Assembly: GCA_002269645.1 (NCBI GenBank)
Contig: NIVC01003140.1
Span: 1 to 64,000 of the forward strand
Length of the DNA: 64,000 bases
From: Macrostomum lignano
Lineage: Eukaryota
Direction: 5' to 3'
Positions 11,867 through 64,000 of the stretch are shown here, piece by piece. The notes under the pieces were generated by a model. It was given only the letters and a program-made list of their open reading frames with translations. It was not told the origin of the DNA and did no database searches. A program made the translations under genes and the position numbers. The stretch's first letter is position 1. Each line of letters starts with the position of its first letter.

Positions 11867-12935
11867 GCTTAATTGGCATATTTTATTGGAATATACTTTA
11901 CTAGATAGCCAGATACTTTCCGGCATACATATAACATGATCCACAATATGGCCTATAGTATATACACATTTTGTTGCCACAAAAAGTACTTTCAAAATTT
12001 CATTTTTTGTTAGAAAGCAATTATTGAAAAAAATTTATATTTTAATGATACAAGCAACTATATTTGGTAATTTTTTTAACATCTTGAAAAAATTTTTTCT
12101 TCCTGTTTAGATGGTATAAAAAAACAGTTGAATAAAAATTGTGCTTGCATTTCCGAAGCTTAGTAAAACCCAGAAATGTATGCTATTCTAAATATGATTA
12201 TATAAAAAAAACTACACATGTCTCTTTACATCTGCCAAAAAGTTATTGAGGCCTATTTTTGCCTATTTCCTCAGTGTAAAATATACTCGTTTTAAGTTGA
12301 GGAACAGAAAATTTCATTATTTTTCTAGAATAATTTCCAAAGACTATTCTTTTACTACATTTAATAGAGGAGCATATAAGAATTCTTGACAACACTTTTT
12401 TTCTGCATGTATCCACCAAGCAGCCGCAGCAGCAATGTTTGCTATTTTAGTAGCCATATTACCTACATACTACTTATATAAAAATGGATTATTAGCTTCT
12501 CTTAACAAAAAAGAGTTTTACCACTGCAGATTTGTTTTAAAGGTAAAATAATTCAAATAAATATATGCTTCAGCTTATTATTGAGCTTTAGCAATTGCAA
12601 TCCAAACAAGTGACTCTTTGAATGCATATAACCTTGGTCTACAATGCAAACTCTCATAAAATGAACTGAATTTCATAAGAAATGGTATTTATTCAATTTG
12701 TATATTTAATAAGCAACTTTACAATATACAATTTTAAGTATAATATATTTTTAAATACTTTTTTACACTTTTTATAGATATAAATGTTGATTGGCAGCTT
12801 TACTCACAGTATACAATAAGGGTTACACTTAATACAAAAAATATACAAGACAATAGTCTATCAACAATAATTTACCTATATGTTTTGCATTGAAAAAGCA
12901 AAGCAGACAATATATGTTGTATGTAAAGACAATAA

Positions 12936-21812: not shown

Positions 21813-25214
<3,402 letters not shown>

Positions 25215-28438: not shown

Positions 28439-29180
28439 ATTGAGCGAGCAGTGTTGTTAATCTTGTGTGGTGTCAGAGAGTTTGAGTGTCCCTTGTGCGT
28501 TATGCCTTTTGCTGAAAAAAGTGTCCAACTCAACTGGGTTTCTTAGTTTTAGTTTGCTTCTAGTAGTCGGTTATTAGGCAAACTTGGCAAACAGTCTGCA
28601 TTATATTTTCTTGGTCAACTGCCTTGCCTTGTCCAGCCTTCTGCGCATTCCAAGTGGCCCACGTATGCAACCGGCTCACTCATCTCTTTGCCCTCTATCC
28701 CTTCTCACTGCTTTGTCAAATTGCTATTGTATCAGACCCTAAGTTGGCTTTTGGCAACTTGGTTTGGCGCAGACTGCGGGTTTCCCATGAGCTCTCTATG
28801 GGAGCTATTCTTCTCCTACCAAAGGCTCTATGGATTCTATTCACCAATCCTACCCTCAGACTTCCTGTATGCACTAGACTGCTTTGGTTACTCTTATCAA
28901 TTTGGTTACTCTATATCCTCGTGCCTTTCCGTTGCCAAGAGAATCTCCCCGTCGTGGGTTTGGGAATAGTCACAATACCATTGTCTAATCACTCTTTCAG
29001 ATCTTCCCTAGTAATCCTTCAGAAAGTACTTCAAGTTATGTAAGATAATTTTAGCATCGAGTTTGATTTAGGCAAATCCATAATAATACTTAAGTAATAT
29101 AGTTACAGAAATAAATCCATATACTGCTGTCATAATCTATCCAGAAGTATGCTGCTGGTCGCATTTATGCTAATTTAAAC

Positions 29181-29756
29181 ATGCCGCAGGGCAAAAATTC
29201 CAAGATCATGGCGCACATCAATTATCGGATGCGGTGCACCCTGCAGGACGGCCGCGTATTCATCGGCACCTTCCTCGCCTTCGATCGGCACATGAATCTC
29301 GTGCTGGCCGATTGCGAAGAGTTTCGCACGGTTAAAGCCAAGGGCGACAAGGCTGAGCGAGAGGAGAAGCGCGCCCTCGGCCTTGTGCTGCTTCGCGGAG
29401 AGCACCTGGTTTCCATGTCTGTGGCCGGTCCTCCCCCTCAAGAAGAGGTTGGCAAAGTTCCAATTCCGCAGGCCACCGCTGCCAGCGTCGGTGGCGTCGG
29501 TATTGGCCGCGCTGCTGGGCGCGGTGCCCCGCCTGCGGCGGCCCCTGTGCCCGGCTTGGCTGGACCAGCGCGCGGTGTCGGCGGGCCCGCACCAGCTATG
29601 ATGCAGCCGCGGCCGCCGTCCATGCCTCCGATGCGACCGTCGGTGGCACCGCCGGGCATCGGGAGTGGCATTCCGCCGCCCATGCCTCCGGCCGGCTATG
29701 GCCGCGGCGCGCCCCCCGGATTCGGGCCTGGTGGATTTCAGCCCGGTCCGCGCTGA
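29181..29756 (+). CDS. SNRPB: Small nuclear ribonucleoprotein SmB/B', single coding exon, 191 aa
   Basis: Sm1/Sm2 motifs [38 protein letters not shown] and [26 protein letters not shown], followed by an RG- and Pro-rich tail. Confidence 0.98.
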
Positions 29757-31714
29757 ATTCCATCGTTCTGTTCTTCTGGATCTTGCGCTAGCTAAGGCTG
29801 CTAGGTGCAAGTCACAATTAACTTCGTTTTGTTGTGCCGTTTCTGTCTATTTCGTTCATTGTTTCTACTCTGTCCCTTTGCACCTTGGGAATTTGCGTTT
29901 CAAGTTTTATATTTGTATTCGATTTTTCGGCGAAGCTGGCTGAATCAGTGATTATTTGTTACAGTTGTAATTCAGTAAATTATCTCTTCTCTTGTGCAAC
30001 GGGGTTACGGTGTAAAAGTATTGGAGTATTCAATTGAAACAATTAGGGCTAGAAATCCAATATAAGGACTAAATGGGCAAAACAAGTAATGAAAAAATCG
30101 TTAGCCTGCTGCTTTATTACGTTACTATCGGCTTTTTCAATTGTTGTTTACTTAGCCGAGTATAAAATTTATAGCGTTCTCGCGAAATCAGAAAGCATTT
30201 ATGCAAGGCAATCTGAACAGTCTGAAGCATTGGACTATATAATTCCAAGTGCGTAGGCTCAATATTCCGGTGGCACTGAGACCGAGTGATTCATTTACCG
30301 CAAGTTTCTAAAATAAATAATTAGTGCTGCTATGTCTGGTCAGGTGTGCAAATTTCGCATTTCTCCCCCTGAGTTTGTTTTCATAATAATAATTTGTAGG
30401 TTTCTTTGACAGGGTTTGGACTGCTTTCTCTTGTCTCAAATCAAGGGTCCCATTTTTAGTTTAACTCTCTAAATGTTAAAGTGTATTTGAACGCAATTAT
30501 GTTTAATAATGTGAAATAAAATTTTCAAGACCTATCCACCAGTTCCATAAATTTAAAACGGTATGTTTGTCAGAAGACAAATGCCAATGAGCGTTAATTA
30601 TTAAACTGTACTAAAAATTGCGTACCTTAGCTTTCTAAAAAGTGAAAGTAAAAAGTGACTGTCTTAAACTCTGAAAGTTATCGCGTGTATATTTAATACT
30701 TTAGATATTTGTGCGTGTGGATAGTTCGTCTTTTTAGTTTTCAGGGTGCATAAATGAAAAATTCGGTCATAAACAAAAACAGAGTGATTATTTTTCATCT
30801 GTTTTGTGTTTCTGGGAGAGTATTGCAATGCATGGCCTCACCCACCCACTCAGTGCAGTCATCGAGATTTCTGTCTATGGCTGTAACTCCAGGCTAAATC
30901 AAGACCCAATCTCAGTCTAGCTTCAACTTCTTTGCGTGTATCCCCACTTGTTCGGGCATAAGTCAGTGGTATAGTTTTCGCTAATTTTGCCGAGGAGTAA
31001 ATAATTTATTTTTCTGGTTCCTGAAGTCCAGAGAATTTTCGTCTATGGCTCAAAAATGTTTGTTGACTTAGTTGAACCGGAGGATACTTAGAGCAGCAGA
31101 ACCAGACGCTATAGTCTATGGTCTTAACCCCGGAGTTTTCGCGCTGTGGCCAGGCGGCTGGAGTGGCCCATCTAGGTAATATGGAATCTGTGCAGTTAGT
31201 TGTCTAGCTGCGAGTAGATAATGGGGAATATATATATTATTTGGCGCTCTTAGCAATCTCGTGGTTTTCGGTAAAAAAAGCGTTCATAATGATCTATTTA
31301 AATTTCTGGGCACTTTCTTGGCAAGGAATCGGCAGTTTATGGCTCAAACTACTCACGGTGAACTTTTTCGTCATCAATAATCGGCGAATTATTGATAGTT
31401 AATGTACAAGTTGCTACTTGACTGTATATGTGGTAGGTTGATAAGCCTTTAAGATATGCTATACAAATAGGAAGATTAGATTAGAAAAACTAATAGTTTG
31501 TTATAAGCAACTTCACACCTAGGAATTAGCTCGCGATGGGTTGAATTCGCGAAAATATCATGTTGAACGGGAGACGCATTATCTAGTCTGCTTATTTTTT
31601 GCTAGACAGAAATATATACTGACTCGTGGAACGACACCAACGAAACTCTTACTTTGTTTGTAGCAGTGTTGCATCTATTCCCGATTGAGGGCAAAGCAAA
31701 AGAAATCATTGCAG

Positions 31715-33156
31715 AAGAGCGCTGCTTCAGCATCGACCGCAGCTGGATGGCACCTGGCTTCGCGGCTGTATCGCTTCCCACAGCAGCCCCTGCCACTAGA
31801 TGCGGTGAGTCGCAGCCACCGTCACCTTGTTAGCGCTGGCTATCTCCGTTCTGGTTCAGTTCCGGGCACGTTTGCACTGTGTCCGCTTCTCTGCCGCAGC
31901 CTTGACAAGCTTATCTACCTTATTCACGATAGCATGAGCCAGTTGGGTGCGCAGAGAGTGACGCTGCCTATGCTTGGTTCCGCGGCTATGTGGCACAAGA
32001 CTGGGCGCTGGGATGCGCTGGGCTCGGAGATGTTCCGGCTGACCGATCGGGAGGACAGACAGTTATGCTTGCAGCCTACTCATGAAGAGGAGGTCACTCG
32101 GCTGGTCTCCATGACTGCTCAGCTGCCACTGCGATCGCTGCCGCTGCTTGTGTACCAATTGCACTGGAAATTTCGCGACGAGCCCCGCCCAAAGTACGGT
32201 CTGTTGCGGGCCAGAGAGTTTCTCATGATGGATCTCTACAGCTTTCATGCTGATGATGCTTGCGCCAGAAATACTTATGATCAGGTTGGTTGCTCAAGTT
32301 TGCTTTTTATTGTCTGAAACGGTTTTCTGGCTTTAATCCACTTCTGCATCGCCAGGTTCTGAAGCTGTACTCTAGTCTGCTTGGCGACACTCTGGGTCTG
32401 CCATGGATTCGAGCAGTCGCTTCCTCTGGCTGCATGGGCGGAATCGAATCTTGCGAATTCCACGTGTTAACAAAGCCTGGAGAAGATCGAATTGTGCGCT
32501 GTGCAGACTGTAACGAACCTTGCCGCAACTCCGAGGGTGGCCGTATTGCACTGCCCAACTGCCTGAGTCCTGCAGCATGCCGAGCAGAATTCCTTACCGG
32601 CCTGGAAGTTGGCCACTGCTTTATCCTGGGTTCAGACCGCTATCCAGCCGCCTTCGGCCTGCGCCTGATTGACCAAAATCATCACAGACAGCGTGAGCAG
32701 CGCCTCCTAAGCATGGCCTGCTACGGCATCGGTGTCAGCCGGCTGCTAGCCGCTTGTGCCGAAGTTGCCTCCACGGATACTGCGCTGCGTTGGCCGCTAG
32801 CCGTTGCGCCCTACCAGCTGGCGGTTGTGTCACCAAAAGCCGGTGCTCGCGAGCCACGCTTGTCAACTGAGACTATGGCTGAGCTAGTGCAAGCACTTGG
32901 TGATGCTGAGTTCAATCCGGATGCGCCTCTGGTTGACGATCGGGACCAGCTGACTATTGGCACTCGGATTCGCGATCACAGACTCTGGGGCCTGCCGTGC
33001 AGTCTGGTTGTAAAAGCCTCTGTTGACGGAGGCATCAGCTGCGAGTTTGTGGACAATTACCAACCAGATCGACAGTCAGAAAGAGCTACTGTGGCTTCTG
33101 CTGCCGAGGCGGTGGCAATTGCACGGACCTTTATTGCTTCCATTTCCCTGAAATGA
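31715..33156 (+). CDS. PARS2: Mitochondrial (bacterial-type) prolyl-tRNA synthetase
   Basis: Exons ~31715-32284 and 32356-33156 (71-nt GT-AG intron, in frame). Class II motifs WHKTGRWD, LQPTHEEEVT, KFRDEPRPKYGLLRAREFLMMDLYSF, EVGHCFILG, MACYGIGVSR, plus an anticodon-binding domain (LRWPLAVAPYQ, DDRDQLTIG). No in-frame ATG after the stop at 31661-31663, so the 5' end is unresolved. Confidence 0.93.
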
Positions 33157-33534: not shown

Positions 33535-33838
33535 GAGGGGGTTGTAACCTACCGATTAAAGCGTCGGACTCGCGACTGAAAGGTCGGGGGTTCGATTCCC
33601 GACCCACTCAGAAAAAATGTGTCCTTGAGCAAAACGCTTAACTCTGCACTGCTTCAGTTCACCCAGCTGTAAATGGATACTAGCATTTGCTAGGGTAATT
33701 GAGGGTGTGTGCCGACCTCACTGTCCTTGGACTGAACAACCGTACGCGGCCTTTAGATGCGCCTCGCAATAGCTGCGGCTGAGCGGTTGGTTGCACATCT
33801 GCTCATTAGGACAGGTGTAATCGATCGTTATTATTATT
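33535..33838 (+). mobile_element. tRNA-derived CORE-SINE, copy 1
   Basis: tRNA-like head with B box GGTTCGATTCC, then GTGTCCTTGAGCAAAACGCTTAACTCTGCACTGCTTCAGTTCACCCAGCTGTAAATGG, which resembles the MIR/CORE central domain, and a (TTA)n tail. Related to 45803-46070. Confidence 0.8.
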
Positions 33839-34182
33839 CAGATTATAAAAATGCTAAATAGACTCTACTATTGCTAGTTGTGCTATTAATTAGGCTCAAG
33901 ACTTCTAGATGCATTTGCACTTCCTTTCGTCTCTATTTGAAGTGCTTTTTATTTTGTGTCCTAAAATGAAATTTATTAAAACATATAGGAGTTTTAGGGA
34001 ATTTTCGGGATCTCTTCTTTTCGGGTAAAAGGTGTTTGTTATGGTTACATTGTGTTCAATAGGAGGTCTAATTCTACACTCAGCGGTGTACTTATTCCCA
34101 AATCTATGTCAGCTATAGCCTGTAGATCATGCTAATAAAACTTTCTCGCGCACGCTTCAGCCTGTTTGACACAGCAGAAGTC

Positions 34183-37100
34183 ATGCCAAGCCAACAGGCG
34201 CAGCTGCAGCGACAAAGGGAGAGACGTGAATCGAATGAGCAGCAGATGCAGCAACCTGCTGTCACTGCGGAAAGCTCCGTTTACTATGAACTCGAAGTGC
34301 CCTCGTGGCTGGTGGGACTTACAGCCGTATGGCTAGCCGCTGTACTGCTGAGCGGCTGCTACCTGTACCAGTTGGATGCCGGTCATTGGGCCGAAATGCG
34401 GACCGCGTTTGGAGTCGAACTTCAGTCTGATGATCACGCTAACCCGCCGATGCGCATTTTGCGCCTGTCTGCCAGTCAACTTATTGCCCAACTCGGCGAG
34501 GACAAAGCCCGGCTCTTTGCTCTTCTGGACAGGGACGGTAACGGCCTGGTGTCGATTACCGAGTACGAAGCTCTGGTGCATCATGTCCGTCAGGATGCTC
34601 GTCACCCGGCAGTCCTTCAGGTGTCTGGTGATTTCATGTATCCGCAAAACGAGTGCGAAACGCCAACTGACAGGTGTGTTAAGTCGAAATACTTTGGGTC
34701 TATTGCTGAAATACCAGTCGCTTTTTACACAAAATTTAAATGCCAAAAAAGAATCCAAGAATTGGATTTGGAGTTGGCTTTAGAATCCAACTGCATTCTA
34801 AAATTTGTTTCAATTTTATTGTAAAATTAAACATGAAGAGTTTATTGGGTGGTGATCAGTCACTCAATAACTCCCACTTCTAGACACTGGGTAACAAGTG
34901 CCTAGGTATAAACAAAATCAAATAACTCTTACTGCAGCGGATCCTCTTGAGGTTGGTAGTCGGCTGGGTCTTGTTGCTTGTAGGGCTAGCTAGCTTGATG
35001 AGCGGTGGGGGCCGGTTCCGGTGAACAGCTGTTGTCTCTTGGAGTCCTTAACTTTATCTGTGGGTCGACCAAAACGAGAGCGAATCAGAATTCTTGACGG
35101 TCCTCGAGCTCGGAATTCACAATAGAACGTGCGCCCTTATGAACAATTGAATTCTTTAAATCTCTGTAGTAGGTCCTCCTGAAGGGCGTCGTCTCCGTTA
35201 CGTCCGAAACGTAACGGGTAACTTGAATCAACTCAATAAATCCTCTAGGAATGTATCCTAGGAAACAAGGAGGCCTTTCTCAAATGTGTCGACAATAAGT
35301 GGCTCTCGTAAACTCAATTAATCAACTTATTAGTGCTATAGCAAAGAACTAAAACGGGTAACGCTTACCAATCTGTCCGGATTTCTTCTCTCAGAGATGG
35401 GTCTTCTTGGTTAACGTAATCCAAAGTCTTCCTTGAGACCACTCCGAGTCTGAATTTTTGACTCGGATTTTCGCTTATATTTATAGTAAAATTTGGTGAA
35501 AACTGGTTTAAAATCGTTTATTTACTTAGGTCACGTATTTTGGTTATGAGGTCATGAATGTTTGATCATTTCCATATATGAAATTAAGCAAATAAAACTA
35601 CCGAGAACCGGTTTCTTAATCAAATAAACGTTGGTCCTACGTAGGGCTCTAAGTCACTTCTGTTTGCACATGACTCATTCTAAAAATAGATTTTCTAAAA
35701 ATATATATAACTCATCATGACTCATTCTAAAAATAGATTGCGAGTTTAAATTAATTTTATTAGAATATTACTTTGAGTAGTGCGTTCTGATATGATTTAC
35801 AGTTCTCTACAAAAATTTGAGACTAGTTTGTGGGATCTGATTAACTCTCTGCATTGTTCTATTTCTTTCAGTGACTCGTGCATCCAATTGAGCTATAACC
35901 TGGTGCCCCCACAATCAGTGAAGGTTTTGGGAAGCCATCAGCAGCATTTTGTGCCATATACTCGATACGATCCTGTAAGCAACACCCTGGCTACAGTGGC
36001 ACAGAGTGAAAACAATGACACCGCCAGCCCTGCCCAGCAGGAAACTGCAGCTGCTCTTGCTGACTTTGCCTCTGCCGGTACCGTGGACAACATCACAGTC
36101 CCTGTTGACTCCGTCACGATAACAACAGCCTTCCTGCCCCGCTTGCCGAAGAAACTAGACCAGCTAAGGCTTGGCGACCCCTATACTTTGATTGGGCCGG
36201 CACCAATGGGTCTGCAGTTTTTTTACTCCAAACAGTGCAGAATAAAGCCTGGCGTATACTTTGAGCCCGGCGATGCTGCTTTGGCCGCGCTCCTGCGCCC
36301 GCTGCATCCGCACGTGTTTCTCTATCCGCGTCACGACGCCGGCCGTGATTCCGCAGCGGCAGTGCTCCGGGCCGAGTCGCCAACCCATCTGGAGCTGGTG
36401 TTCCGTTTACACCCTGAGCTCCAACTCGCCCCGTTCGGCGCCCCTCGCAGCGTCTACCTGACACCAGAGGGCTTGGAAGGCCGCCTCATTATCCGGCGAA
36501 GTGGCGGCGTCGAGCACTTGGAACTCGGACTGCCCCAGCCTGCCTTGGCCAACCGTAGCTTCTCTCAGATCGAATCTCCGCACGACATTTTGGAAACTGG
36601 TGTTGTCTCTCTGCCTCGCCTAAGTGTTATTTCCCTAAAAAAATCGTACAAACACCTTCATAACTGGACTAACGAGATTTCCATGCCGGCTACTCTGACA
36701 ATTTTGCGCTCACACATGCTGCCTCACCTGGCTGCTCAGTTTTATGCTAACCTGAGCACTGCATTGGCTGTTAATAGCAAGGCGCTAGGAGCAGGTGACG
36801 CAAAGCCAATCCATGTTGTACTCGCCGTTGGTAGCTCACAGTTCGGCTGCGATCCCAACTGTAGGCTGTTAAGAGACTTTGCATTCGCCGATCAATACGT
36901 GATGCTTAGGCTCCGGTGAGTGTTTCTTTGTCTTTTCAATATAGTTCTCAAGGACTACTCAACTAGGACGGGAAACTACGTTTATTGGAAAATTTTAGGA
37001 GGCAGGTTTTACGAAAAAAGACATCACGGAGATAGTTTTAAATTTTACTGTACAAAAAATGCTTTTGATAGGGGGCTAACCGATTTTCATCTTTAGACAA

Positions 37101-37827
37101 GTGTCGAGTTGTGCCATTTTTTTCTTTTTAGGCACAGGACATGTACGTAGGATACAAAATTAACATAGAATCCTAATTTTCTAAACGAGAAGCTTTATGA
37201 ATATCGATAGAGCTATAAGAAAGACAAGACTTATATAACGTATTTTTTCGGTAAAACCTGCCTCGTAAAATTTTCCAAGAAAAAGCGTAGTTTCCAGTCC
37301 TACTTGAGCAGTCCTTGATAGCTCTGTTTATATCGCGGCTTCTGCATGCCGCCGCCTCAGTTTAAAATCAGTTCTGATATTCCACACTTGAAATTCGCGC
37401 TTTCAGGCACTACTATACCAACGTGTGGATTAACCTGGCTGACACAGGCGCAGTGGCAGAGTTCATCAAGCTCACTGGGGTGTCCGACACCTCAAAGCCT
37501 TTTGCGCCACTCACCTGTCAGCTGCTTCACCCTGAGACCCTGCGAGTCCTGGCCAACTATGAGGCAGGCGACCTACGCAAGGCTCTGCAGCCGCCAGAGG
37601 ACCTGCCAAATCCGCTGCCCCCAACACCCGAGGCTGTAGTTGCAGGCGCCGAGCCGTATCCGCGTCCCCATGGCAACCTGCTTTCCTCGCAGTCACCCGG
37701 CGAAGAGTCACCGTCTGCCCCGGAAGACCCAGATATTCGCCTCCAGCAGGAGCAGAAAGCGATGGATGCTATCAAGCAGCAGGTTGCAGATTCTTATATG
37801 CAGTTTCTAATGAGCAGCAAGGCCTGA
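34183..37827 (+). CDS. SELENON: Selenoprotein N-like ER membrane EF-hand/thioredoxin-like protein without a Sec codon (651 aa)
   Basis: Exons 34183-34673, 35872-36915, 37407-37827 total 1956 nt in frame. N-terminal TM segment, EF hand FALLDRDGNGLVSITEY, segments AFLPRLP..LGDPY, VFRLHPELQL, YLTPEGLEGRLII, KPIHVVLAVG..C....RLLRD and C-terminal SYMQFL are collinear with SelN as recalled (FRIHAEFQL, KLVHSILLWG...SCUGSGRTLRE, TYMQFL). Confidence 0.8.
36949..37317. mobile_element. MITE in SelN-like intron 2, P-element-like termini
   Basis: ~32-bp TIRs CAAGGACTACTCAACTAGGACGGGAAACTACG and CGTAGTTTCCAGTCCTACTTGAGCAGTCCTTG. 8-bp TSD ATAGTTCT/ATAGCTCT (1 mismatch). CAAGG fits the CANRG terminus described for the P superfamily. 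Confidence 0.75.
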
Positions 37828-39601
37828 GAATGTGATGGGCTAAGTCCGTTAAAAAATCTTTGCAGAGTAAGAAAAGAATGATGCTATCTATAGCTTACTG
37901 ACTGAAAAAGCTTGTGTGCGTTAAGGTTTATACACTCATTCCTTTGCCATTTTAAACAGCTGTATAAAGGTTTTATTCCTATTTTTCCCAGTGGCTGAGC
38001 CTGACATTTAATGATATATGAAATAGTATCCGTACAAATCAAATTGCCAACTACTTGTATGCCTTGGTGGCTCTATCGCTTTCACACGGCTATTAAATAA
38101 GCCTGATAATTTGCGTGCGCATCTTTTAACTAATTGGCATCGCCTCGGTATTGCACGGATGATTTCCTGTCGTTGTCTGTTTTTTTATACTTAACTTGTT
38201 TGTTGCTCTTCGATGCTCCAAAAAATGTTTGATCTTGATAGAGCAATCTTTAGCTAGTACAAGTTTTATACGAGCGTAGATGTATCTAGTAGTATATGAA
38301 AACGAATATTATTCATTTCGATAAGATACTACTGGCCAACTTCTTTATTGTAATTCTGTTATCTTGCTATATTATAAACTAGCGATCGTGTTTTAAAAGC
38401 AAGTACATGTACAAATATACTATGTGCATGTAGAATTCAAAAGAAACTTGCATTCTATGTGATTAAAAAATTTCATACTGGCTGAACAATACACATGGTT
38501 CTTTTTTGTTCTTACATGTATACACTACACAAAACGTGTTTCTCACGAAAAATATAATTAGCTTTTTTCTTATTATTTCATCATTTACTAATTTTTAACC
38601 AAAGGAAAATGCGGGGGAATTCGATAAAAAATTGGTTTGATTTAACTGACCACTACAGCTATAGCTTCACTTAACTAAGATATCAAACATTAAGCAATAA
38701 GTACAATTATGTACTCGTAAAGCACAACAAGCAAAGTTCCACCCACCAAGCAAAGATATTTTTATTTATCTTTTTCGGCCTTAAGTTTTACCGTGCATTT
38801 TAAATAAGAAGTTTTCTCTTTGCGCATAATTTGTACTGTTGGAACTTTTGACTGTTGCTGTATGTATATAACTACTACAGCAATACGAGAGTATAATTTA
38901 TGCATATACCAAGTCAAACATGACGCCAGTCGGTCTGGGTCAAAGCCCACGCGACTGCACTTCGGTGATATTGACAGAATTCAGTCGGGTTGGCTTCAAT
39001 CAATGTAATGACTATACTTTTGTAAAGAGGAATGAAACGCAGTGGCTCTATTAAAGATATAAATCTAAACGCGTACGAGACTATAAAAATACACATGTTC
39101 CATGCATGCACAAGTGATACGATTGTATAATGCATAATCTTATTGCTGTACGCTCATTGCTGATATTAAACACGCCGGAAGGAGCCAAACGAGACAAAGT
39201 CAGTTGCGAAAAGCAGGCAGCGGCCGAGAAAGCGGATCCCAGTGGATCAAGCGAAGCGTTTATTTATTAGTTTAAACGAGTCAATATTTATTGGTTCGTA
39301 AGAAGGAGATAAAAAAAATTGAGAAATGGCGGCGGAGCCAAGCCGGGCCGGGTGCAGAGGCTTTAAGCTGGCCGGCGCGGCCAACACCCCACACCTCAAC
39401 CCCGCCAAAGTACAGCGATATGTACAGCGGCACCCTCCGGCGCGTCTAACACCCCTTACTCAGAGAGTAACGATTGCATTAAACACGCCGGAAGGAGCCA
39501 AACGAGACAAAGTCAGTTGCGAAAAGCATGCAGGCAGCGGCCGAGAAAGCGGATCCCAACCCCAATGATGGGGAAGGGAAGGAGTAAAAGCGGGAAGGCA
39601 G

Positions 39602-40472
39602 TCAGGTGGACACAGCCTGCAGCTGTGAAGCTATGAAAGAAGCAGAGCGCTGGCGGCGCGACAGGGCAGAGCTGGCAGAAAAGTAGCGGAGAACAGCGTC
39701 CGATCTCCAGCCCCCAAGAGCCCGAACGTCCGAATCTGACAAGCCGATTTGATGGCAGAAGCTGGCACCCCCACGCCGGATGCTGTGGCCGAAGAAACCA
39801 GCAGCTGGAAGGCCGCACGCAGCCAGACACGCACGAAGACAGCTGATGAACTGGCTGGCTGAGAGCTCGCCTCCGAGGCCGTAGCCAAAGAGTGGCGCCC
39901 TTGGGTCGCTGGCTGGTGACAGGTGCAGGTGAGACCGCAGAGCGCGCACAGGGCAGAGCGGTGACTCTTGAACAGGTGGCAGAATAACGACATACGGCGT
40001 CGACCCGAACTGGTTGGTCTTGGACTTAGGGAGGGCCAACTTCCAGCAGCCAGATGAAGCCGACAGGCAGGCCCGTGAGACAGAGCGGCTGCCGCGGGTC
40101 GATAGGAAGTCGCCAAGGCGCAACATGCTCCACCAGAAGAGCCGCCCAGAAGGCGGCCCTGAGATCTGCGCCTGTTTGCATCGCAGGCGCCGCGGAGGGC
40201 CAGCTGCACGGTGAAGTCTTTCGCTGGTTCGGGGGCGCCGCGGTGGCTTGGTGCAGAAAAGAGACGGCATGGATGTAGGATCGGAGGCTAGAGAAGGACC
40301 GGAGCCGGGTGCTCACAAGGTGCGCAATGTAGCGGCAGAGCAGGTCACCGTCAGCTGGAGATAAGGGGCGGCCTGCGCTATCACAGAAGGCTTCCCAGGA
40401 GCGCAGCCGGCTGAGGTAGCATCGCCAGGAGTTCTCCGCCAGGCCGAGGCGGCACAGGTGTCCGGCGGACAC
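39602..40472 (-). pseudogene. Tyrosine recombinase of the Ngaro element (frameshifted)
   Basis: N-terminal SAM-like part in one frame (SWRCYLSRLRSWEAFC...SLRSYIHAVSFLH). Catalytic part in another frame (MLRLGD, KSKTNQ, CPVRAL, GHSIRRGGAS, LGGWRSDAVLRY). Confidence 0.9.
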
Positions 40473-42313
40473 AGCGCGGGGGGCGGGCGGCGTCTCCGGA
40501 GGGCGAGGGCGACCTGCAAAAGGAGGCGAGATTGGGAAGCGGCATAGAGCGCGTGCGACGCGAACTCAAGCGGGCAGATCACGAGCGTACGGTAGTAGCG
40601 GCCACAAATGAGCTCAGACTGCGAGGCAAACATGCGGGAGGCGGCATCAGCAAAAATCTGCATGCGACCAGGAAGGTGAAAGGCCTCCAAACTGATGCTG
40701 TTCCTGATGCACAGCAGAGCCACAGTCTGGTACACCTGCAGGAACCGCGGGTCACGACAGCTCAGCCGATTGATCATGCCAGCCGCAGCGGTGCTATCGG
40801 TGTAGATGACAATCTTGCAGTTCTTTAGCTGAGAGCGACGGTGCAGGATGATCAGCAAAGGTGCCAGAGCCTCCTTGAAGTTGATATGAACATCCTTGAA
40901 CACACCACCGCAGTCCAGCTCCCAGTCGATGACACTCCAGAAACTCTCGGCACCCCAGATGACGGCGGCTGCGCCCGACCGGCTGCTGTCAGTCTTCATG
41001 GCAAACTCCTCATCAAAGCGCGGCCACAAAGCCACCGGGGGGAGCCAAGCCAGAGCTCTGAGCCACCAGGACAAGTTGGCGCGGGTCTCATCGGTCACCC
41101 AAAGCTTGCAGTCAACAGCAGTTGTCAGCCAGTCGAAGAGCGGACGCAGGAAGACTCTGACATGAAGGACAATCTGACAGAACCAGCCAAGCTTGCCAAT
41201 CAGCTTCTGAGCAGAGCGCATGTGCACCCGAGTCTCCGAGCAGGTTTGAGTCAGCAGCTTTGTCGTCTCGAGAGCTTTCTCCTCGGGCAGCGACTTGGTG
41301 CCGGTAGCGGTGTTGATGCGCACGCCAAGGAAGTCGATGCATTGCGTAAGTCTGACAACCTTGTCCCAGTTGATGGCAAAGCCGAGGCGCTGCAGGATGT
41401 CCAGCAGGCAATTGAAAGCAGCGAAAGCCTCGGACTCGGATTTCCCAGCGACTGCCCAGTCATCCAGGTAGTTCACCGTAGCAGAAAAGCCAAGCCGGTG
41501 CGTGTGCCGGGTAACGGCGGCTGAAAGACGGTGAAAAACTTCGTAAGCAGCTTTGGCGCCGAAGGGAAGCCTGGTGTCGCAGAGCAGACTGTCCTGGCTG
41601 TCTGAGTCAAACCGCCAGGCGAGGCCGACGAGCCGCTAGTCAGCAGGCCTGATTGGCACGGACCTGTAGGCGCTTTTGAGATCAATTTTTGCCATGTAGT
41701 GTCCCGGATGGAGATGACGAACCAGCTGCTGGACAGCGCAGTACTTGATGTGCTTCTGTTGGTCGTAGAAGTCGTTTACAGACTGGCCGTTCGGATAGGA
41801 CAGGTCATGGATCAGGCGGACCCGCCCGTCGGACTTGGGAAGGGCACCGATGGGGTTGATTTTGATCGGGCCGCTCCACCGGATGTACCTCCCAAGGCGC
41901 AGCTCCTCCTCGACCTGGGCTTCCACAGCAGAGCGGTACAGCAGGGCGGAGGCGTGGTTCTTGGACGAAGTCAAAGGCGGCTGGCCAGCATTGGTGAGAG
42001 CGAAACCGTTGACAACGCCTTGCATCAGAAAGTCGCGGTCTGGGTCGTCACTGAGCAGAGCACTCCAGGCGTCAGGTTGCAGGTCAGACGAGATGGGCAG
42101 CGAAGAAGTAAAAGCAGAAAAATCGGAATTAAAAGTAGAGCAGTCAGCTGGATAAAATGGCATCAGTTTTTTGCACTCGCACCGGTCACGTGACCCGGCA
42201 GCTGTCCGGTGAGTAATGACTGCGGCGACTGCGTGTGAGCGTGAGCCGGGTGCGCTGCCAGGCAGCCTTGGATTTTGCAGACGTGGCGGAACTTGCAGTT
42301 CTGGCGGGTGCAC
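40313..42313 (-). pseudogene. Reverse transcriptase-RNase H of the Ngaro element with one premature stop
   Basis: NPIGALPKSDGRVRLIHDLS, AKIDLKSAYRSVPI, RLPFG, YLDD, then RNase H residues KTDSS, HINFKEALA, YTDSTAA, HLPG..QIFADAASR. In-frame TAG at 41636-41638 (PAD*RLVG); the frame continues after it. Confidence 0.93.
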
Positions 42314-43271
42314 CCGGACTCGCAGTTGAAGCGCAGACAGATCGGCCTGGTTGCTGCCGGGATTTGCTGCTGGCTGGGCTGCTTAGCGAGCGTGAACCGC
42401 AGGTTTCTGGGGGCGTTGAGGTGCTTGTGGTACAACTGAGGGGGCTCCTCACCCCACGCCATGCCCGACTCCGCCACCAGCCTCCGGTAGTCCTCGTCAA
42501 ACTCCCAGATTACGGACTCCGGGTAGTCAGCAGCCAGCAGCTCTCCGATCTTGCGATTGTAGTCCAGGTAGCCAAGGACGTCAGTCAGGAGACCATCAGT
42601 GCTTCCAGCAGCCGCCGGGAGTTTTTCCTTGATCAGCTTTTGCAAGATGATCGAGTTGGCCGCGATCCACTGACCAGCAGAGATACTGGACAGCTTCGGC
42701 TCCTGCTTTCTGAATGCGAGCGAGCCATTCTCCATAGTGGCGATCAACTGCTCCTGACTGGCTGAGCCGGGTCCTCTGGCTAGCTTGATATGGTCGATGC
42801 AACTTGCGAGTCGGAGCCTGGCAATTAGCGGCCTGAAGCTGAGCCGCCTCCCTCATCCCAGATTAAAAAACCTCGGGCAACTGCAGACTGGCATGTGCGT
42901 TATGCTCACCTGATGATGATGCTGGCGTGGGGCTGAGCCGTCAAGCGCTGCTGAGTGTGAAGCTGTTGCTGAAGATCACGACGACGGCCTTCCAGGACTT
43001 GCAGTTCGAGCAGCTCCACCTCCTGCCGCAGCGCAGCCAGCCGGTCGCTCCCCGCCCCCGGAGGCGCCTCGCCCGCGCTGCCGATGCCGTCTTCGGCGTC
43101 CGGAGCAGAAGTCATCTCGGAGTTGCTGAAGTCTTCGTCAGCTTGCTCTAAACCGAGTGCAGTAGACAAGCGCTTGGCAAGCTGTTGTTTGAGGCCCGTA
43201 GTAGGCAGGCCTCTGTTTCGCAGCTCAGCCTTGAGTTGGCGCACGTTTAGTCGCTTTGGGCTGGCACTCAT
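42163..43271 (-). pseudogene. gag-like ORF1 of the Ngaro element: N-terminal SAP-like motif and C-terminal Cys/His finger, broken around 42850-42910
   Basis: MSASPKRLNVRQLKAELRNRGLPTTGLKQQLAKRL (SAP-like). KLSSISAGQWIAANS and WEFDEDYRR, then CLRFNCESGCTRQNCKFRHVCKIQGCLAAHPAHAH. Confidence 0.8.
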
Positions 43272-45802
43272 GGCGGTGGCTGGGCAAAAAATTGAGAAAT
43301 GACGGCGGAGCCAAGCCGGGCCGGGTGCAGAGGCTTTAAGCTGGCCGGCGCGGCCAACACCCCACACCTCAACCCCCCGCCAAAGTACAGCGATATGTAC
43401 AGCGGCACCCTCCGGCGCGTCTAACACCCCTAACTCAGAGAGTAACGATTGCAATAATACATGAGTGTAGTAATGGTATCCTTAATTTGCATCAAGAACC
43501 ACTGGAAGATTACGTTATAGAGGACGCGACACTTGCAAATAATGTAACTTTTTTGAAGGCCCGCTTGTTAACGTGTATTTAGCGTAGCGGTTCTTGCCTT
43601 AAAAAAGCATTCTACTCGACTGTTTTAAAGAAGCCTGCACTACATTTGGACCTCAGAAGCTCCGTATAGGCCGTGTATTTTTAGTTTATTAAGACTTTAT
43701 GTTCCATCTACACACTTAACGTATGCAACCTTGCAACTCGATTGGCGTTACTTTACTGTCGCCCGCCGCTCCTACATGTAGATATACATGTAGCGTCAAA
43801 CTTTGCGTCACGTGATAAAGAAAAAAGTTGAACAACCTCTCGAAAAAAATTATCATTCTACGAGCAACTGATCCAGAGAATTACTGTATGAGCAGTTAAA
43901 TTTTACTAGTGCGCTGCTGTAATGCAAAAACGGGCCTTCAAAAAGATTGCCATACTCGTATAGATTTTGATTGTTGCGTCCTATACTAAAGTAGTCCTTG
44001 ATCGATTGCATATACAGTACGCGCACTCATATGGTCTACTATTAGGCGTTGCACTTGCAAAGCCATGCACGCTACATGTACAAGTATATTCAATTCCCCA
44101 TTGTGTGCACGCTGACTGTTAAAAACATATTATTGCACGCAGATCAGCTATTACATGTACCATGTATATATATATATGCTACATATGTGATTGACAATGG
44201 TTACTGCAGCAACTTATAGGGAAGCACATGTATGAGAATTATGCTAAGTGTGAGAAGAGCGCGGAACCTGGACCATAAGTTGGGAAAATAGGTACAAATT
44301 ACATAAATCCCCGTTTGTCCATATACTCCTATGTTGGTTTGACCTATCATGACAAAATATGGTTGTTTATAGTTGATGTATGGCAGTGGCTTCTGCCTGC
44401 ATTGTTCGACTTGATCCCGTCTTATAAATTATCAACAGATGGCTACGCAATACGTCGATCGATCAGTGAAATGTGTTGCCTAAATTACTACATGTACTTT
44501 TAGTTTTATAAAAATCTTTTTAAAAGCCTCTTGAAACTGTACATGCACATTTTTATTTCGCTTCATACGCTTATGCCTTTTGCTACAAAAGCCTACTACG
44601 ATGCCATGTATTTACTAAATGTACACTGTATTTTTATAGCTATACCGCAAACATTGCAGTTAATCAAGCAAACAAATCTTTAAGTAATAACTAGCAGCAA
44701 ATGGCAATGAAAATAGTTAAAAACTACAGAAACTTATACGTGCATAAAATGAATAAAGAAATAAACATATTTTCTTTGATATATCAGTTGACGGATAAGA
44801 TTCACTCGCGACATGCGACTTTTTAAACGAGGTAGAAATGCAGTATATTTTATGCAGAATTACATGCAAGCTTTGAAGCTTTTTGTTTAAACTTTTTAAA
44901 AGACTAGCTTTATCGATGCTAGAAAATGTTTACAGTTTGATAATATTCTGATAATATTTTAGGAATTTCTATTCAATATAAGTAAATTGCAAACAAGACG
45001 AACTTATTCAATATCTATATATAATATAAGGCTAAATATAATAAAATATGCATCAACAGTAGGCCTACAACAGTTTCTTCTGATGATTTTTTTTTGTTTT
45101 TTAAGAGTTAATTGCTTAAGTAATTATTTCATTAGTTAACTATGTTTTCAATGTAGCTAAATTTTAATTTTAGTACATGAGACTATTTTTTGCTTTTTGA
45201 GACACCAAGAAACCATGGTCTATATTATAGTGTCTGTCTCGATGCAAGTATTAAACAAAATGCCTTATATAATTACATACTTTATAGCCAATAATTAAGC
45301 ATTAAGCCAATAATATATTATCAAAACCAAATTTATATTAAGCCCAACAAGCACTTAAAACACGATAGACCTAGACCCATCTTAGCCATCTGTGACTGTC
45401 AAAGCCAGCAGCATCAAAGCTTAGAATCCTAAATCATTTGAGTAGCCAGATGTACAAAACTAAACTGAACAACGTCTAGAGATTAAAAGTGAATTTTACT
45501 ATGATTTTTTACTCTGAAATCCTAAAAATCGATTCCCGTCCATGTTTGCCTTAGTAGCAAGCTTAGCTAGCTGCAAGTTTGCGCAATTTTAAATTAGCGA
45601 TAGGATGAAGTCCTTTTTCTAGAACTTCTATTACTGCTTTTAATTGCATTGAATACATTATTAATTGAAAATTGTTTTGGATCAGTAATCTGTTTATTAT
45701 TACCAGTTATGTGGCGCAACTAGGGGGGGGGGGGAGGCGGGGGCAGAGACCAGAAAAAAATATAAGGGGGACAGTGCTAAAAAAGAGGGGATTGTAGCCG
45801 AA

Positions 45803-46190: not shown

Positions 46191-49100
46191 TCTGCTCCCG
46201 CCAGAGCCAAGCTGGATGGCAATCGGGGTGCAGTTGAGGACCATCAGAAGGTCGAGCCTCAACAGGAGCAGCAGAAGCAGGCCATGCTGCGCCAGCTTCA
46301 CTCTCTGAAGTCGCAGGTCAGTCGGCTACAGTGCCGCTGCGATGAGCTGGTGCTGCTCAATCAACAGCTGGAGGGCCGGGGCTCCAGCCTGGCAGCGGAC
46401 ACTGAAGACATTTTAGAATACTTGCGAGGCCAGCTCTCAGAGAAGGCAAGCAACTGCCAGCAACTTCAGGAAGAGCTGCGTTGCTTGCGGGAGGCTCACG
46501 AAGCTGAGCAACGGGCCTATTCGGAGCGGGCCGAGGCGCAGAGACGGGAGCACCAAGATATGAAAGAGAACCTCGAGAGCGATCTGCTGTCACTTCGTGA
46601 GTTTGCAAATATTTGAAAAGTGTATGCTGGCTCGTAGGGCTGACGACGCACTGTGCAACTGTTTTCCACAAACATTTCATTTTATATGAACGCTTTTTTA
46701 AGGTCTTCTGTTCTAAACGGAGGAATTAGCCTCTAAAATCTACAAATTCTATGGTTCGTTTGTTCAGCTGCACGAGAGGGTTCTATTTTGCATCTCATCG
46801 AGAACTCATGGAAATTATGAATGATATTGATTGGCATTTCATTATTTTTTGTCGCAAATTAGTATAAGATCATTTTTAGTCTAAGATTTTATATTGAAGT
46901 CAAATTCAATGGATTTGCAAATAAATTAGCAATTGATCCACCTGATTGATTCATTAACTATCACTTAAAATCACCTAACAGCATAAAAATACCCGTCTTG
47001 ATATATTCTGAATATATAATAAATCATGCAACGAAAGTGTATGATTAAATGCTCGAATCTTACAGAAGGGAAGCTGACGGCTCTTGAGGAATACCGTTTG
47101 CTGAAGGAGGAGCTGGCGGCCAAGTTCGCCGAGCTGGAGTTGCAGACGAACGGGGAGCAGGCTCACCAGCGCCAGGAGCTGTACGATCTGGACCGCAGTG
47201 GCGTAGTTACGAAAGATGCGCAGCGCAAGGAGATTCTGCGGCGGGTGACTGACGTGGCGGCCGAGTTGCGGACGGCATCTCGCCGCCAGCAGGTGGAGAC
47301 TGGCCGCCTCACCATTCAAGCCAATGCGGAGCTCAACCGGCGGCTGCGTGAAATTAGCGACGCTGTGGCTCACCTGGTTGGCGTGGGCGACGAGGCCCGC
47401 TCCAGGGAGCGAGAAAACCTGACGGAGATCGACGTGCTGGCTGGGGTGGAGCGGGAGATGACGGCCAGAACGCAGGGCTCGTTGAAGGTGAAGGTTGGAC
47501 AGTTTTGTAAATAATCAGTCAGTCAGTCAGTCAGTCAGTCAGTCAGTCAGTCAGTCAGTCAGTCAGTCAGTCAGTCAGTCAGTCAGTCAGTCAGTCAGGC
47601 AGTCAGTCAGTCAGTCAGTCAGTCAGTCAGTCAGTCAGTCAGTCAGTCAGTCAGTCAGTCAGTCAGTCAGTCAGTCAGTCAGTCAGTCAGTCAGTCAGTC
47701 AGTCAGTCAGTCAGTCAGTCAGTCAGTCAGTCAGTCAGTCAGTCAGTCAGTCAGTCAGTCAGTCAGTCAGGCAGTCAGTCAGTCAGTCAGTCAGTCAGTC
47801 AGTCAGTCAGTCAGTCAAGTCAGTCAGGCAGTCAGTCAGTCAGTCAGTCAGTCAGTCAGTCAGTCAGGCAGGCAGTCAATCAGTCAGTCAGTCAGTCAGG
47901 CAGTCAGTCAGTCAGGCAGTCAGTCAGTCAGTCAGTCAGTCAGGCAGTCAGGCAGTCAGTCAGTCAGTCAGTCAGTCAGTCAGGCAGTCAGTCAGGCAGT
48001 CAGTCAGTCAGTCAGTCAGTCAGTCAGTCAGGCAGGCAGTCAATCAGTCAGTCAGTCAGTCAGGCAGTCAGTCAGTCAGGCAGTCAGTCAGTCAGTCAGT
48101 CAGTCAGGCAGTCAGTCAGTCAGTCAGGCAGTCAATCAGTCAGTCAGGCATTCAGTCAGTCAGTCAGTCAGGCAGTCAGTCAGTCAGTCAAGTCAGTCAG
48201 GCAGTCAGTCAGTCAGTCAGTCAGTCAGTCAGTCAGGCAGGCAGTCAATCAGTCAGTCAGTCAGTCAGGCAGTCAGTCAGTCAGGCAGTCAGTCAGTCAG
48301 TCAGTCAGTCAGTCAGGCAGTCAGTCAGTCAGTCAGTCAGTCAGTCAGGCAGTCAGGCAGTCAGTCAGTCAGTCAGTCAGTCAGTCAGGCATTCAGTCAG
48401 TCAGTCAGTCAGGCAGTCAGTCAGTCAGTCAGTCAGTCAGTGTGGGGACCGGTGCCACGAGCCACATAGCTTCCCGGCTGGACCTTTATGCACCCATTCG
48501 GATGTGGAAGCAAGGCCTTTAGGAACTTTCTTATAGCTGGTGCTTCAGCTATAATTTCTTTATTAATTACTTGCTATGGATTGCGTTGCAGAAAATCAGG
48601 CTACTGGCTGATGGCTGCAGGCGGCTGGACACGCAGCTGATCGACATGGAGGAACGGTCAGAGGCGGCGCAGACGGTGGCGTCAGAGCACGGCCGACTCC
48701 GCCAGCAGGTAGTTGAGCTGAATCAGGCAGCAGCGGCGGCGCGAGATCGGCTCAGCCGCGCCACAGCGGATTTGCACGAGATTTCGACGCGCGCCAGCAA
48801 TGTATCTCGCTGTGGCCGACGCCTTCGCCGACAGCTGATGCGATGCTCTGCGGACGTTAACGAGGCTTTAGCCAGCCTGCTGATGCCGGATGACGAGCTC
48901 ACGGAAGCTGAGGCAGTTTTCAGGTAAGGAAAATGAGTGAGGAAATGTAGAATGCGTGTAAAGTGTGGGTTCCGTATATGTATACACATGTACATTCGTC
49001 AGCAGCATGTACATGTACTTAAAGGAAAGCATCTTGGATTCTCTTCAACCTCCTGGCAGGCGGCGCCGAATGCTGGCCAGACTGCTCGATTTGCTTCTGA

Positions 49101-63484: not shown

Positions 63485-64000
63485 GTGAGTTTTTGTCTCG
63501 CAACTATTCCTGTCTTTACTTCTGCAGTCCTTGGAGGGCAGAGCAGCTCACCCGTTGAATACTTTAGCGGGACAAGAATCGCTAGAGTCATTGCAAACAG
63601 CTCACCAGTGACTCTAGCGCTTTAGAGGCAACTCGGTAATTCTACAGCGACTCTGGCACGCCTCAGAGTACAGGGGGCCCGCAGGTTCTGTGCTGCTCAA
63701 GTGCTTTTGAGTTATAAAATATAACTATATAAAAAGCCCCTATCTTAAGCCTGCCTTAAACTGTTAGGAACAAATCCTGGATAACGTTATATTAAAGTTT
63801 GTTGAGCTGATCGGCAAGAATGCTAAACACCCAATTTAGCATATGCTCACCATCAGCATTACCATGCAGAATATACTGTACACTCTAGACAATACTTGTT
63901 TAGCTTTAGATGCCTATAATCAGATAGATGACAGCGAAGACCAGAAAGTCTAGGAGTTGTGTTTCTTGAAGGGAGAGGTTCAGCAGAGCAATTTAAGCAA

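What the first reader, a model, noticed from the sequence alone, without database searches (positions are those of the whole stretch)
34183..37827. Selenoprotein N homolog that lacks selenocysteine and carries a CxxxC motif
Seen: a 651-aa three-exon ORF with TM, EF-hand and SelN-like collinear blocks. At the position of vertebrate DDQSCUGSGRTLRE it reads SSQFGCDPNCRLLRD (codons TGC GAT CCC AAC TGT at 36848-36862), with no in-frame TGA anywhere. Known: SelN is an ER calcium/redox sensor acting on SERCA/RyR whose activity is attributed to the CU motif; most selenoprotein families swap U to C, not U to D with a new downstream Cys. Inference: a Sec-independent SelN paralog that may use a CxxxC dithiol or be a non-catalytic Ca sensor, which would be an undescribed branch of the family.
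Basis: partly seen in the sequence, partly recalled or inferred. Interest (0 to 1): 0.7.

Follow-up and report, generated by a model that had tools for sequence, protein, structure and literature searches.

The report
Selenium-free paralog of selenoprotein N
The flatworm Macrostomum lignano carries, besides a normal selenocysteine-containing selenoprotein N gene elsewhere in its genome, this very divergent second copy that keeps the membrane anchor, calcium-binding EF-hand and thioredoxin-like fold but has aspartate where the selenocysteine should be, so it probably no longer does selenium-based redox chemistry.

Summary
Window 34183-37827 (+) holds a three-exon, 651-aa ORF with no in-frame stop, and 36848-36862 reads TGC GAT CCC AAC TGT (Cys490-Asp-Pro-Asn-Cys494). 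It equals GenBank PAA53073.1 of Macrostomum lignano.

Homology to selenoprotein N (SelN) is solid. An exhaustive phmmer search gave 49 hits; most are SelN models cut at "...LWGALDDQSC", the Sec UGA. Several carry the source name "selenoprotein N".

The same genome also has a canonical SelN (PAA88127.1). Its locus reads ...[21 protein letters not shown]... in frame, so the window gene is a true Sec-less paralog. Aligned to it, Cys490 matches the Cys of SCU, Asp491 the Sec, and Arg495 and Arg498 the two conserved arginines.

The only other full-length member of this branch, on an environmental contig, reads FGQALPETLRLFRE with no cysteine. The CxxxC is therefore not a conserved feature of the branch. 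Window and contig genes cluster together (93% NJ bootstrap), apart from canonical animal SelN.

An AlphaFold model (pLDDT 77) shows a thioredoxin-like C-terminal domain of the DsbD-gamma type.

Best reading: an ER-membrane, EF-hand SelN-like protein without the selenenylsulfide centre, probably non-catalytic or at most thiol-based. I found no description of this variant.

The parts
34183..34673 (+). Exon 1: start codon, short charged N-terminus, single transmembrane segment, EF-hand; ends in phase 2 at a GT donor
   Evidence: Same boundary as GenBank PAA53073.1. Relatives P0003 and P0004 match it at 44% and 39% identity.
34303..34371 (+). Predicted transmembrane helix (aa 41-63), the only hydrophobic segment
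   Evidence: Kyte-Doolittle scan. Long helix in the AlphaFold model. Aligns with the TM segment of canonical SelN.
34528..34563 (+). EF-hand Ca-binding loop DRDGNGLVSITE (aa 116-127)
   Evidence: Pfam EF-hand_1 E 0.02, below cut-off. Calmodulin EF-hand matches at E 0.04. Aligned with the EF-hand of SelN proteins and conserved in L001 and L003.
34674..35871 (+). Intron 1 (GT...AG); holds no SelN-like coding sequence
   Evidence: tblastn of all SelN hits against the window found nothing in the introns.
35872..36915 (+). Exon 2: linker, beta-rich central SelN domain (aa ~296-430) and first half of the thioredoxin-like domain, including the motif
   Evidence: The family's nearly invariant residues H309, R330, R342, H344, P362, G367 and N391 (651-aa numbering) are kept. 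pLDDT is mostly 80-96.
36848..36862 (+). TGC GAT CCC AAC TGT = Cys490-Asp491-Pro-Asn-Cys494, at the place of canonical Cys-Sec-Gly-Ser-Gly
   Evidence: Alignments. In the model Cys490 lies just before a helix and Cys494 in its first turn.
36916..37406 (+). Intron 2 (GTGAGT...TTTCAG), containing a MITE-like inverted repeat at 36938-37328
   Evidence: The reading frame continues across it exactly as in the intronless L001 homolog.
37407..37827 (+). Exon 3: rest of the thioredoxin-like domain (conserved Y-x-N-x-W, cis-Pro-like AP546L), a disordered Pro-rich stretch, a C-terminal helix with the family's Y-x-x-F-L motif, and stop TGA at 37825-37827
   Evidence: Foldseek matches to DsbD-gamma-type and 3ira thioredoxin-like domains. 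Profile hit to 3ira.

Best explanation
This is a Sec-less paralog of selenoprotein N in Macrostomum lignano.

Shown: it keeps the whole SelN architecture, namely a short N-terminus, one transmembrane helix, one canonical EF-hand loop, the beta-rich central domain and a C-terminal thioredoxin-like domain. At the redox motif it reads Cys-Asp-Pro-Asn-Cys where canonical SelN reads Cys-Sec-Gly-Ser-Gly. A canonical Sec-encoding SelN sits elsewhere in the same genome.

Inferred: like SelN, it is a type II membrane glycoprotein with its bulk in the ER lumen (five N-x-S/T sequons), and it binds luminal Ca2+ through the EF-hand. Without Sec it cannot form the Cys-Sec selenenylsulfide. The other full-length member of its branch has no cysteine at the site. 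The conserved role of the branch is therefore most likely redox-independent, for example a Ca2+-responsive partner, regulator or scaffold that uses the retained central domain and thioredoxin-like surface. This would parallel the way SPS1 split off from the selenoenzyme SPS2.

In M. lignano, Cys490 (ancestral) and Cys494 (new) may add a lineage-specific thiol or metal site. That is not the defining property of the branch.
For: Gene model and motif. Identical GenBank model.

SelN homology: there were 49 hits, most ending in ...DDQSC at the Sec stop. Source names include 'selenoprotein N' from Mactra, Trichonephila and Macrobrachium. The alignment is collinear end to end.

Canonical paralog in the same genome: P0035 and P0071. 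Locus L002 reads ...[24 protein letters not shown]... in frame.

Paralog-to-paralog BLASTP gives E 7e-10 and places Asp491 on the Sec, and Arg495 and Arg498 on the conserved arginines.

Branch relative L001 (26% identity over aa 161-649, 47% around the EF-hand) reads FGQALPETLRLFRE with no Cys. Window and L001 form a clade with 93% NJ bootstrap, separate from animal SelN, which includes the M. lignano canonical copy.

The family's nearly invariant residues are retained. The AlphaFold model has pLDDT 76.8 and pTM 0.70. Its C-terminal domain matches thioredoxin-like folds.

Precedent for non-Sec, non-Cys paralogs with a new function: SPS1 (bioRxiv 10.1101/014928).
Against: No functional data exist. 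ER location, Ca2+ binding and loss of redox activity all rest on sequence alone.

Cys490 is the ancestral Cys of the SCU motif, and Cys494 sits one helical turn away at the start of the first helix of the thioredoxin fold. A working dithiol or metal site in M. lignano cannot be excluded.

The motif loop is the least confident part of the domain in the model (pLDDT about 67 for that block), and I had no coordinates to measure the Cys-Cys distance.

Only one other full-length member of the branch is known, so 'not conserved' rests on a single comparison at 26-30% identity.

The NJ placement outside animal SelN may be long-branch attraction.
Confidence: 0.55

Rival explanations
1. A thiol-based (or metal-binding) SelN. 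In M. lignano the Cys490-x-x-x-Cys494 pair replaces the Cys-Sec pair as a working redox dithiol, or as a metal site like the CxxxC of Sco-type thioredoxin-fold copper proteins. The protein would then still be an oxidoreductase or redox sensor.
For: Cys490 aligns with the conserved Cys of SCUG. Cys490 lies just before a helix and Cys494 in its first turn, the usual place of the thioredoxin-fold active site. The following Arg-x-x-Arg and the cis-Pro-like position are kept. From general knowledge, not tested here: Sco/SenC proteins use CxxxC at this position.
Against: The closest relative has no Cys at either position and a loop two residues longer, so the pair is not under branch-wide constraint. 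Asp at the Sec position is not a conservative replacement. No coordinates were available to check the geometry.
Confidence: 0.25
2. A decaying or functionless duplicate of SelN, a protein-coding relic drifting after loss of Sec.
For: Sequence divergence from canonical SelN is extreme (about 26% identity to its own genome's copy). The catalytic residue is lost. Database searches find almost no relatives.
Against: The 651-codon ORF is intact across three exons with canonical splice sites. The family's nearly invariant residues are retained. The EF-hand loop is canonical. A homolog with the same architecture persists in at least one other, DNA-unrelated organism, and an N-terminal fragment in a third, which implies long-term purifying selection. 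The model folds with confidence.
Confidence: 0.07
3. The orthologous flatworm SelN that simply lost Sec, with no paralogy.
For: A published survey reported no SelN in three flatworms (PMC3828610), which would fit one cryptic divergent ortholog.
Against: M. lignano has canonical SelN genes with an in-frame TGA in SCUGSGR. In the NJ tree they group with animal SelN, and the window gene does not.
Confidence: 0.03

Closest known systems
Selenoprotein N (SELENON/SEPN1), canonical animal form, including M. lignano PAA88127.1 and PAA75298.1
   Same: Same order of parts: N-terminal TM, one EF-hand, central beta-rich domain, thioredoxin-like C-terminal domain, C-terminal Y-x-x-F-L helix. Conserved central-domain residues. 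The Cys of the motif, the two arginines after it, Y/F-x-N/S-x-W and the Pro of F-P-V are kept.
   Different: Asp replaces Sec. The strongly conserved WGxLDDQS-C-U-GSG is replaced by VGSSQFG-C-D-PN-C. There is no in-frame UGA. Identity to canonical SelN is only about 21-26%. It has 3 exons against about 6 in the canonical M. lignano gene. It forms a separate clade.
Environmental homolog on ENA contig ERZ25070786 ctg139160l (L001; P0004 + P0002), and fragment P0003 (L003, marine biofilm metagenome)
   Same: Same Sec-less branch. Shared derived motifs: FGV..(D/E)DEHA.PP before the EF-hand, LTPxGLEGRL, HMLPH, NxWxNLAD. 93% NJ bootstrap with the window gene.
   Different: No cysteine at the motif (FGQALPETLRLFRE). 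The first intron is at a different position and there is no second intron. There is no DNA-level similarity to M. lignano. The organism is unknown.
Cys-form and bacterial SelN homologs (for example P0009 with S-C-C-GSGKTLRK; many bacterial models ending DDQSC)
   Same: Same central and thioredoxin-like domains.
   Different: They keep a Cys-Sec or Cys-Cys pair. The bacterial forms have a signal peptide or lipoprotein leader and no TM or EF-hand.
SPS1 versus SPS2 (selenophosphate synthetase paralogs)
   Same: Analogy only. A selenoprotein gene duplicates and one copy replaces Sec with a residue that is neither Sec nor Cys, taking on a function unrelated to the original catalysis (10.1101/014928).
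   Different: Unrelated protein family. The functional split is shown experimentally for SPS1 and is only inferred here.
DsbD-gamma / DUF255-type thioredoxin-like domains (PDB 3ira, 3f9u, 2fwg)
   Same: Fold of the C-terminal domain (Foldseek probability about 1.0, target TM about 0.5; profile hit to 3ira at E 0.004).
   Different: Those carry CxxC. About 11-17% identity. They lack the central domain, TM and EF-hand.

Membership tests
Selenoprotein N protein family (homology) | Significant sequence similarity to SelN over the central domain and thioredoxin-like domain | tested here: met
   phmmer E 1e-10 to 1e-4 to many SelN models in a library of 1.84 billion proteins. Source names 'selenoprotein N'. 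BLASTP E 7e-10 to the M. lignano canonical SelN.
Selenoprotein N protein family (homology) | Architecture: N-terminal TM anchor, single EF-hand, central domain, C-terminal thioredoxin-like domain | tested here: met
   The EF-hand is below the Pfam cut-off, but its loop is canonical and aligned.
Selenoprotein N sensu stricto (a selenoprotein) | Sec encoded by in-frame UGA within the S-C-U-G motif | tested here: not met
   The site reads G-C-D-P (TGC GAT CCC) and the CDS has no in-frame TGA. The gene is therefore filed as SelN-like, not as a selenoprotein.
Selenoprotein N sensu stricto (a selenoprotein) | [quoted passage not shown] | tested here: inconclusive
   No Rfam SECIS match at E <= 10 in 34000-39600, and none with my own pattern scan. 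The same methods also found none downstream of the canonical M. lignano SelN in L002, so the control failed.
Selenoprotein N sensu stricto (a selenoprotein) | ER-membrane location, luminal Ca2+ sensing, redox action on SERCA | not testable with these tools
   Sequence-based inference only: one TM, an EF-hand, five N-glycosylation sequons.
Thioredoxin-fold CxxC oxidoreductases | C-x-x-C at the N-terminus of helix alpha-1 | tested here: not met
   The spacing is C-x-x-x-C. The fold itself is thioredoxin-like.
Sco/SenC-type CxxxC metal-binding thioredoxin-fold proteins | CxxxC plus a distal His that binds copper; sequence membership in the Sco family | tested here: not met
   No Pfam SCO1-SenC hit at E <= 1. 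The top Foldseek hits are DsbD-gamma and DUF255 types, not Sco. Only the CxxxC spacing is shared, and the resemblance is recalled from memory, not tested.

The most novel reading that the evidence does not exclude
SelN has a second, selenium- and thiol-independent function, for example Ca2+-dependent binding or regulation of an ER partner through the central domain and the thioredoxin-like surface. In some marine and freshwater invertebrates this function has been split off into a dedicated, ancient Sec-less paralog clade, a SelN counterpart of the SPS1/SPS2 split. Studying that clade would isolate the non-redox half of SelN biology, which is relevant to SEPN1-related myopathy.
Probability: 0.3. 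Interest if true: 0.65.

Novelty: new variant of a known kind. Interest (0 to 1): 0.5.

Why it matters
SelN is the selenoprotein mutated in SEPN1-related myopathies, and its molecular mechanism is only partly understood. All described SelN proteins carry Cys-Sec, or in some microbes Cys-Cys. A conserved paralog branch with neither would be a natural separation-of-function variant. It suggests that the EF-hand, central-domain and thioredoxin-like scaffold is useful without the redox centre.

The result also corrects two points. First, Macrostomum lignano has a canonical Sec-SelN, although SelN was reported lost in platyhelminths on the basis of three other species. Second, public models of both genes are mis-annotated: they are truncated at the Sec codon, spliced around it, or named 'Tegument protein'.

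Tried and rejected
- The word-indexed protein search was unproductive three times. With the window protein, alignment A1 and the L001 protein it returned only self hits. Only the exhaustive representative search found relatives.
- Two metagenome scans, with N-terminal and then central patterns, found no further members of the Sec-less branch.
- A single-sequence PDB search gave only weak calmodulin EF-hand matches. No solved SelN structure turned up by profile or by fold.
- The SECIS searches failed even on the positive control (Rfam; my own pattern and RNAfold), so I draw no conclusion from them.
- I looked for an alternative Sec-bearing exon or a second SelN copy in the window. tblastn with all hits found only chance-level matches outside the three exons, so this was rejected.
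- I tried to identify the organism of L001. There is no DNA similarity to M. lignano and no paper mentions its assembly accession. L003 could only be traced to a marine biofilm metagenome.
- The ortholog-with-lost-Sec idea was rejected once the canonical paralog was found.
Full report
**Observation**

Reading 33800-38300 and joining 34183-34673, 35872-36915 and 37407-37827 gives a 1956-nt coding sequence. It has GT...AG introns and encodes 651 aa, with its only stop at 37825-37827. Bases 36848-36862 are TGC GAT CCC AAC TGT, which is Cys490-Asp-Pro-Asn-Cys494.

The model is identical in splicing to GenBank PAA53073.1. That entry is 'hypothetical protein BOX15_Mlig033555g3, partial' from Macrostomum lignano, 658 aa including 7 residues upstream of the Met. 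The window is therefore M. lignano DNA. A shorter UniProt model, A0A1I8FUC4, covers aa 276-651 only and is named 'Tegument protein'.

The protein has one hydrophobic segment at aa 41-62. It has a canonical EF-hand loop, DRDGNGLVSITE, at aa 116-127. That loop scores below the Pfam cut-off (E 0.02) and matches calmodulin weakly (E 0.04). There are five N-x-S/T sequons C-terminal to the membrane segment.

**Is it a SelN homolog?**

Pfam has no matching family, and the word-indexed protein search found only the self hit. The exhaustive phmmer search of 1.84 billion representatives gave 49 hits at E <= 1e-3.

Apart from three EF-hand repeat proteins, these hits are SelN proteins. Most models end exactly in '...LWGALDDQSC', the point where gene callers stop at the Sec UGA of the SCUG motif. 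Several carry the name 'selenoprotein N' or 'SEPN1' at their source: Mactra, Trichonephila, Macrobrachium and Acanthosepion. Many others are bacterial homologs with signal or lipoprotein leaders.

The multiple alignment is collinear from the TM segment and EF-hand, through the central domain and the thioredoxin-like domain, to a C-terminal Y-x-x-F-L helix. The family's nearly invariant residues are present in the window protein.

An AlphaFold2 model built on 47 sequences has mean pLDDT 76.8 and pTM 0.70. Foldseek against the PDB matches only its C-terminal domain, to thioredoxin-like domains of the DsbD-gamma and 3ira type with probability about 1.0. A profile search also hits 3ira at E 0.004. 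No solved SelN structure was found.

**Paralog or converted ortholog?**

One hit, P0035, is M. lignano PAA88127.1. It has a near-identical second copy, PAA75298.1. It is 502 aa and ends '...[12 protein letters not shown]'.

Its locus is L002 (GCA_002269645.1, NIVC01000201.1). It reads '...[42 protein letters not shown]...' in one frame. M. lignano therefore has a canonical Sec-encoding SelN, and the window gene is a true paralog. UniProt models of that gene splice around the Sec codon.

This contrasts with a survey of Schmidtea, Schistosoma and Taenia, which reported SelN as lost in platyhelminths (PMC3828610).

BLASTP of the two M. lignano paralogs, with the Sec written as X, gives 26% identity over 257 aa at E 7e-10. 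The motif region aligns as:

- window: IHVVLAVGS-SQFGCDPNCRLLRDFAF
- canonical: [27 protein letters not shown]

So Cys490 is the Cys of SCU and Asp491 is the Sec. Cys494 replaces the second Gly. Arg495 and Arg498 are the two conserved arginines. The review PMC12839072 lists human p.Sec462Arg and p.Arg466Gln as mutations affecting the SCUG-motif region.

**The Sec-less branch**

The best non-self hit, P0002 (E 5.6e-25), and the N-terminal fragment P0004 lie on one environmental contig, L001 (ENA ERZ25070786). Together they form a two-exon gene.

It is 26% identical to the window protein over aa 161-649, and 47% identical around the EF-hand. It shares motifs that canonical SelN lacks: FGV..DEHA.PP, LTPxGLEGRL, HMLPH and NxWxNLAD.

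A third sequence, P0003 (L003), is an N-terminal fragment from a marine biofilm metagenome. L001 has no DNA similarity to M. lignano, so it comes from a different organism.

In an NJ tree on 261 columns, the window gene and L001 pair with 93% bootstrap. They fall outside the animal SelN clade, which contains the canonical M. lignano copy. The exact placement may be affected by long branches.

At the motif L001 reads 'GFGNLFGQALPETLRLFRE'. It has no Cys and no stop, and its loop is two residues longer. Loss of Sec is therefore shared by the branch, but the CxxxC is specific to the M. lignano gene. The Arg-x-x-Arg, the Y/F-x-N-x-W and the Pro equivalent to the F-P-V loop are kept in both.

**Alternative exon and SECIS**

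tblastn of all hits against the window found no second SelN-like segment, neither in the introns nor elsewhere. There is therefore no hidden UGA exon.

Rfam finds no SECIS at the locus, even at E <= 10. A pattern scan of my own also finds none. The same methods also failed on the 6 kb downstream of the canonical gene in L002. The SECIS result is thus uninformative. It is also not needed, since the CDS has no UGA.

**Mechanism**

Shown: the full SelN scaffold is retained, the Sec is lost, a canonical copy coexists in the genome, and the branch has persisted in at least two unrelated genomes.

Inferred: the protein has type II ER-membrane topology, with a luminal EF-hand that binds Ca2+, as in SelN (PMC12839072). 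Without Sec, the selenenylsulfide chemistry attributed to SCUG is impossible. Without conserved cysteines, the common function of the branch is most likely non-redox. I favour a Ca2+-responsive regulator, scaffold or partner, possibly of canonical SelN or of its client. This is analogous to SPS1, the non-Sec, non-Cys offshoot of SPS2 (10.1101/014928). I put this at about 0.55.

The main rival, at about 0.25, is that Cys490 and Cys494 form a working dithiol or metal site in M. lignano. Cys490 lies just before a helix and Cys494 in its first turn. The loop is the least confident part of the domain (pLDDT about 67), and no coordinates were available to check the geometry.

A decaying duplicate is unlikely (about 0.07), given the intact ORF, the retained invariant residues and the cross-species persistence.

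**Novelty**

Gene models exist in GenBank and UniProt, but only as 'hypothetical protein' or 'Tegument protein'. My literature searches found no description of a non-Sec, non-Cys SelN paralog or of SelN in Macrostomum. I class it as a new variant of a known kind, of moderate interest.

Noticed in passing
L002 (GCA_002269645.1 NIVC01000201.1), about 6001-10909; Sec TGA near 10100: M. lignano has a canonical SelN with an in-frame TGA in SCUGSGR. GenBank models stop at the TGA and UniProt models splice around it. A published survey of three other flatworms reported SelN as lost in platyhelminths.
   Followed up: yes
L002 10909-16102: No SECIS was detected downstream of the canonical SelN stop, by Rfam or by my own pattern scan. 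The region just after the stop runs into a tandem array with a unit of about 65 nt (about 11190-11900). The real SECIS is either missed or lies outside the stretch held.
   Followed up: partly
window 36938-37328 (intron 2): MITE-like element inside the intron: two adjoining inverted-repeat arm pairs (49 nt at 82% and 39 nt at 90% complementarity) flanking about 224 nt.
   Followed up: partly
window 1-8797: Satellite array cut by the window start: 150-bp unit, about 59 copies, 99% matches.
   Followed up: no
window 47515-48441: Long (TCAG)n microsatellite, about 231 copies, open in three + strand frames as SVSQ-type repeats.
   Followed up: no
window 39500-43500 (- strand): Retroelement just downstream of the gene: long minus-strand ORFs, one with a reverse-transcriptase domain (RVT_1, E 9e-8).
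   Followed up: partly
window 21800-25200, 29136-29753, 31664-33153, 51770-53014 (-), 62830-63555: Ordinary housekeeping neighbours, identified by Pfam on ORF pieces: DEAD-box helicase, Sm/LSM protein, class II aminoacyl-tRNA synthetase core, Gcd10p (TRM6-like) and an SF3B2-type DUF382 protein. There is no shared synteny with L001.
   Followed up: partly
window 36200-37827 (UniProt A0A1I8FUC4, P0001): The UniProt model of this gene starts at an internal Met (aa 276) and is named 'Tegument protein'. Nothing found here supports that name.
   Followed up: partly
window 51754-52324 and 53010-53401: Tandem repeats of 27 nt (21 copies) and 29 nt (13.5 copies), next to or overlapping the Gcd10p-like ORF on the opposite strand.
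   Followed up: no
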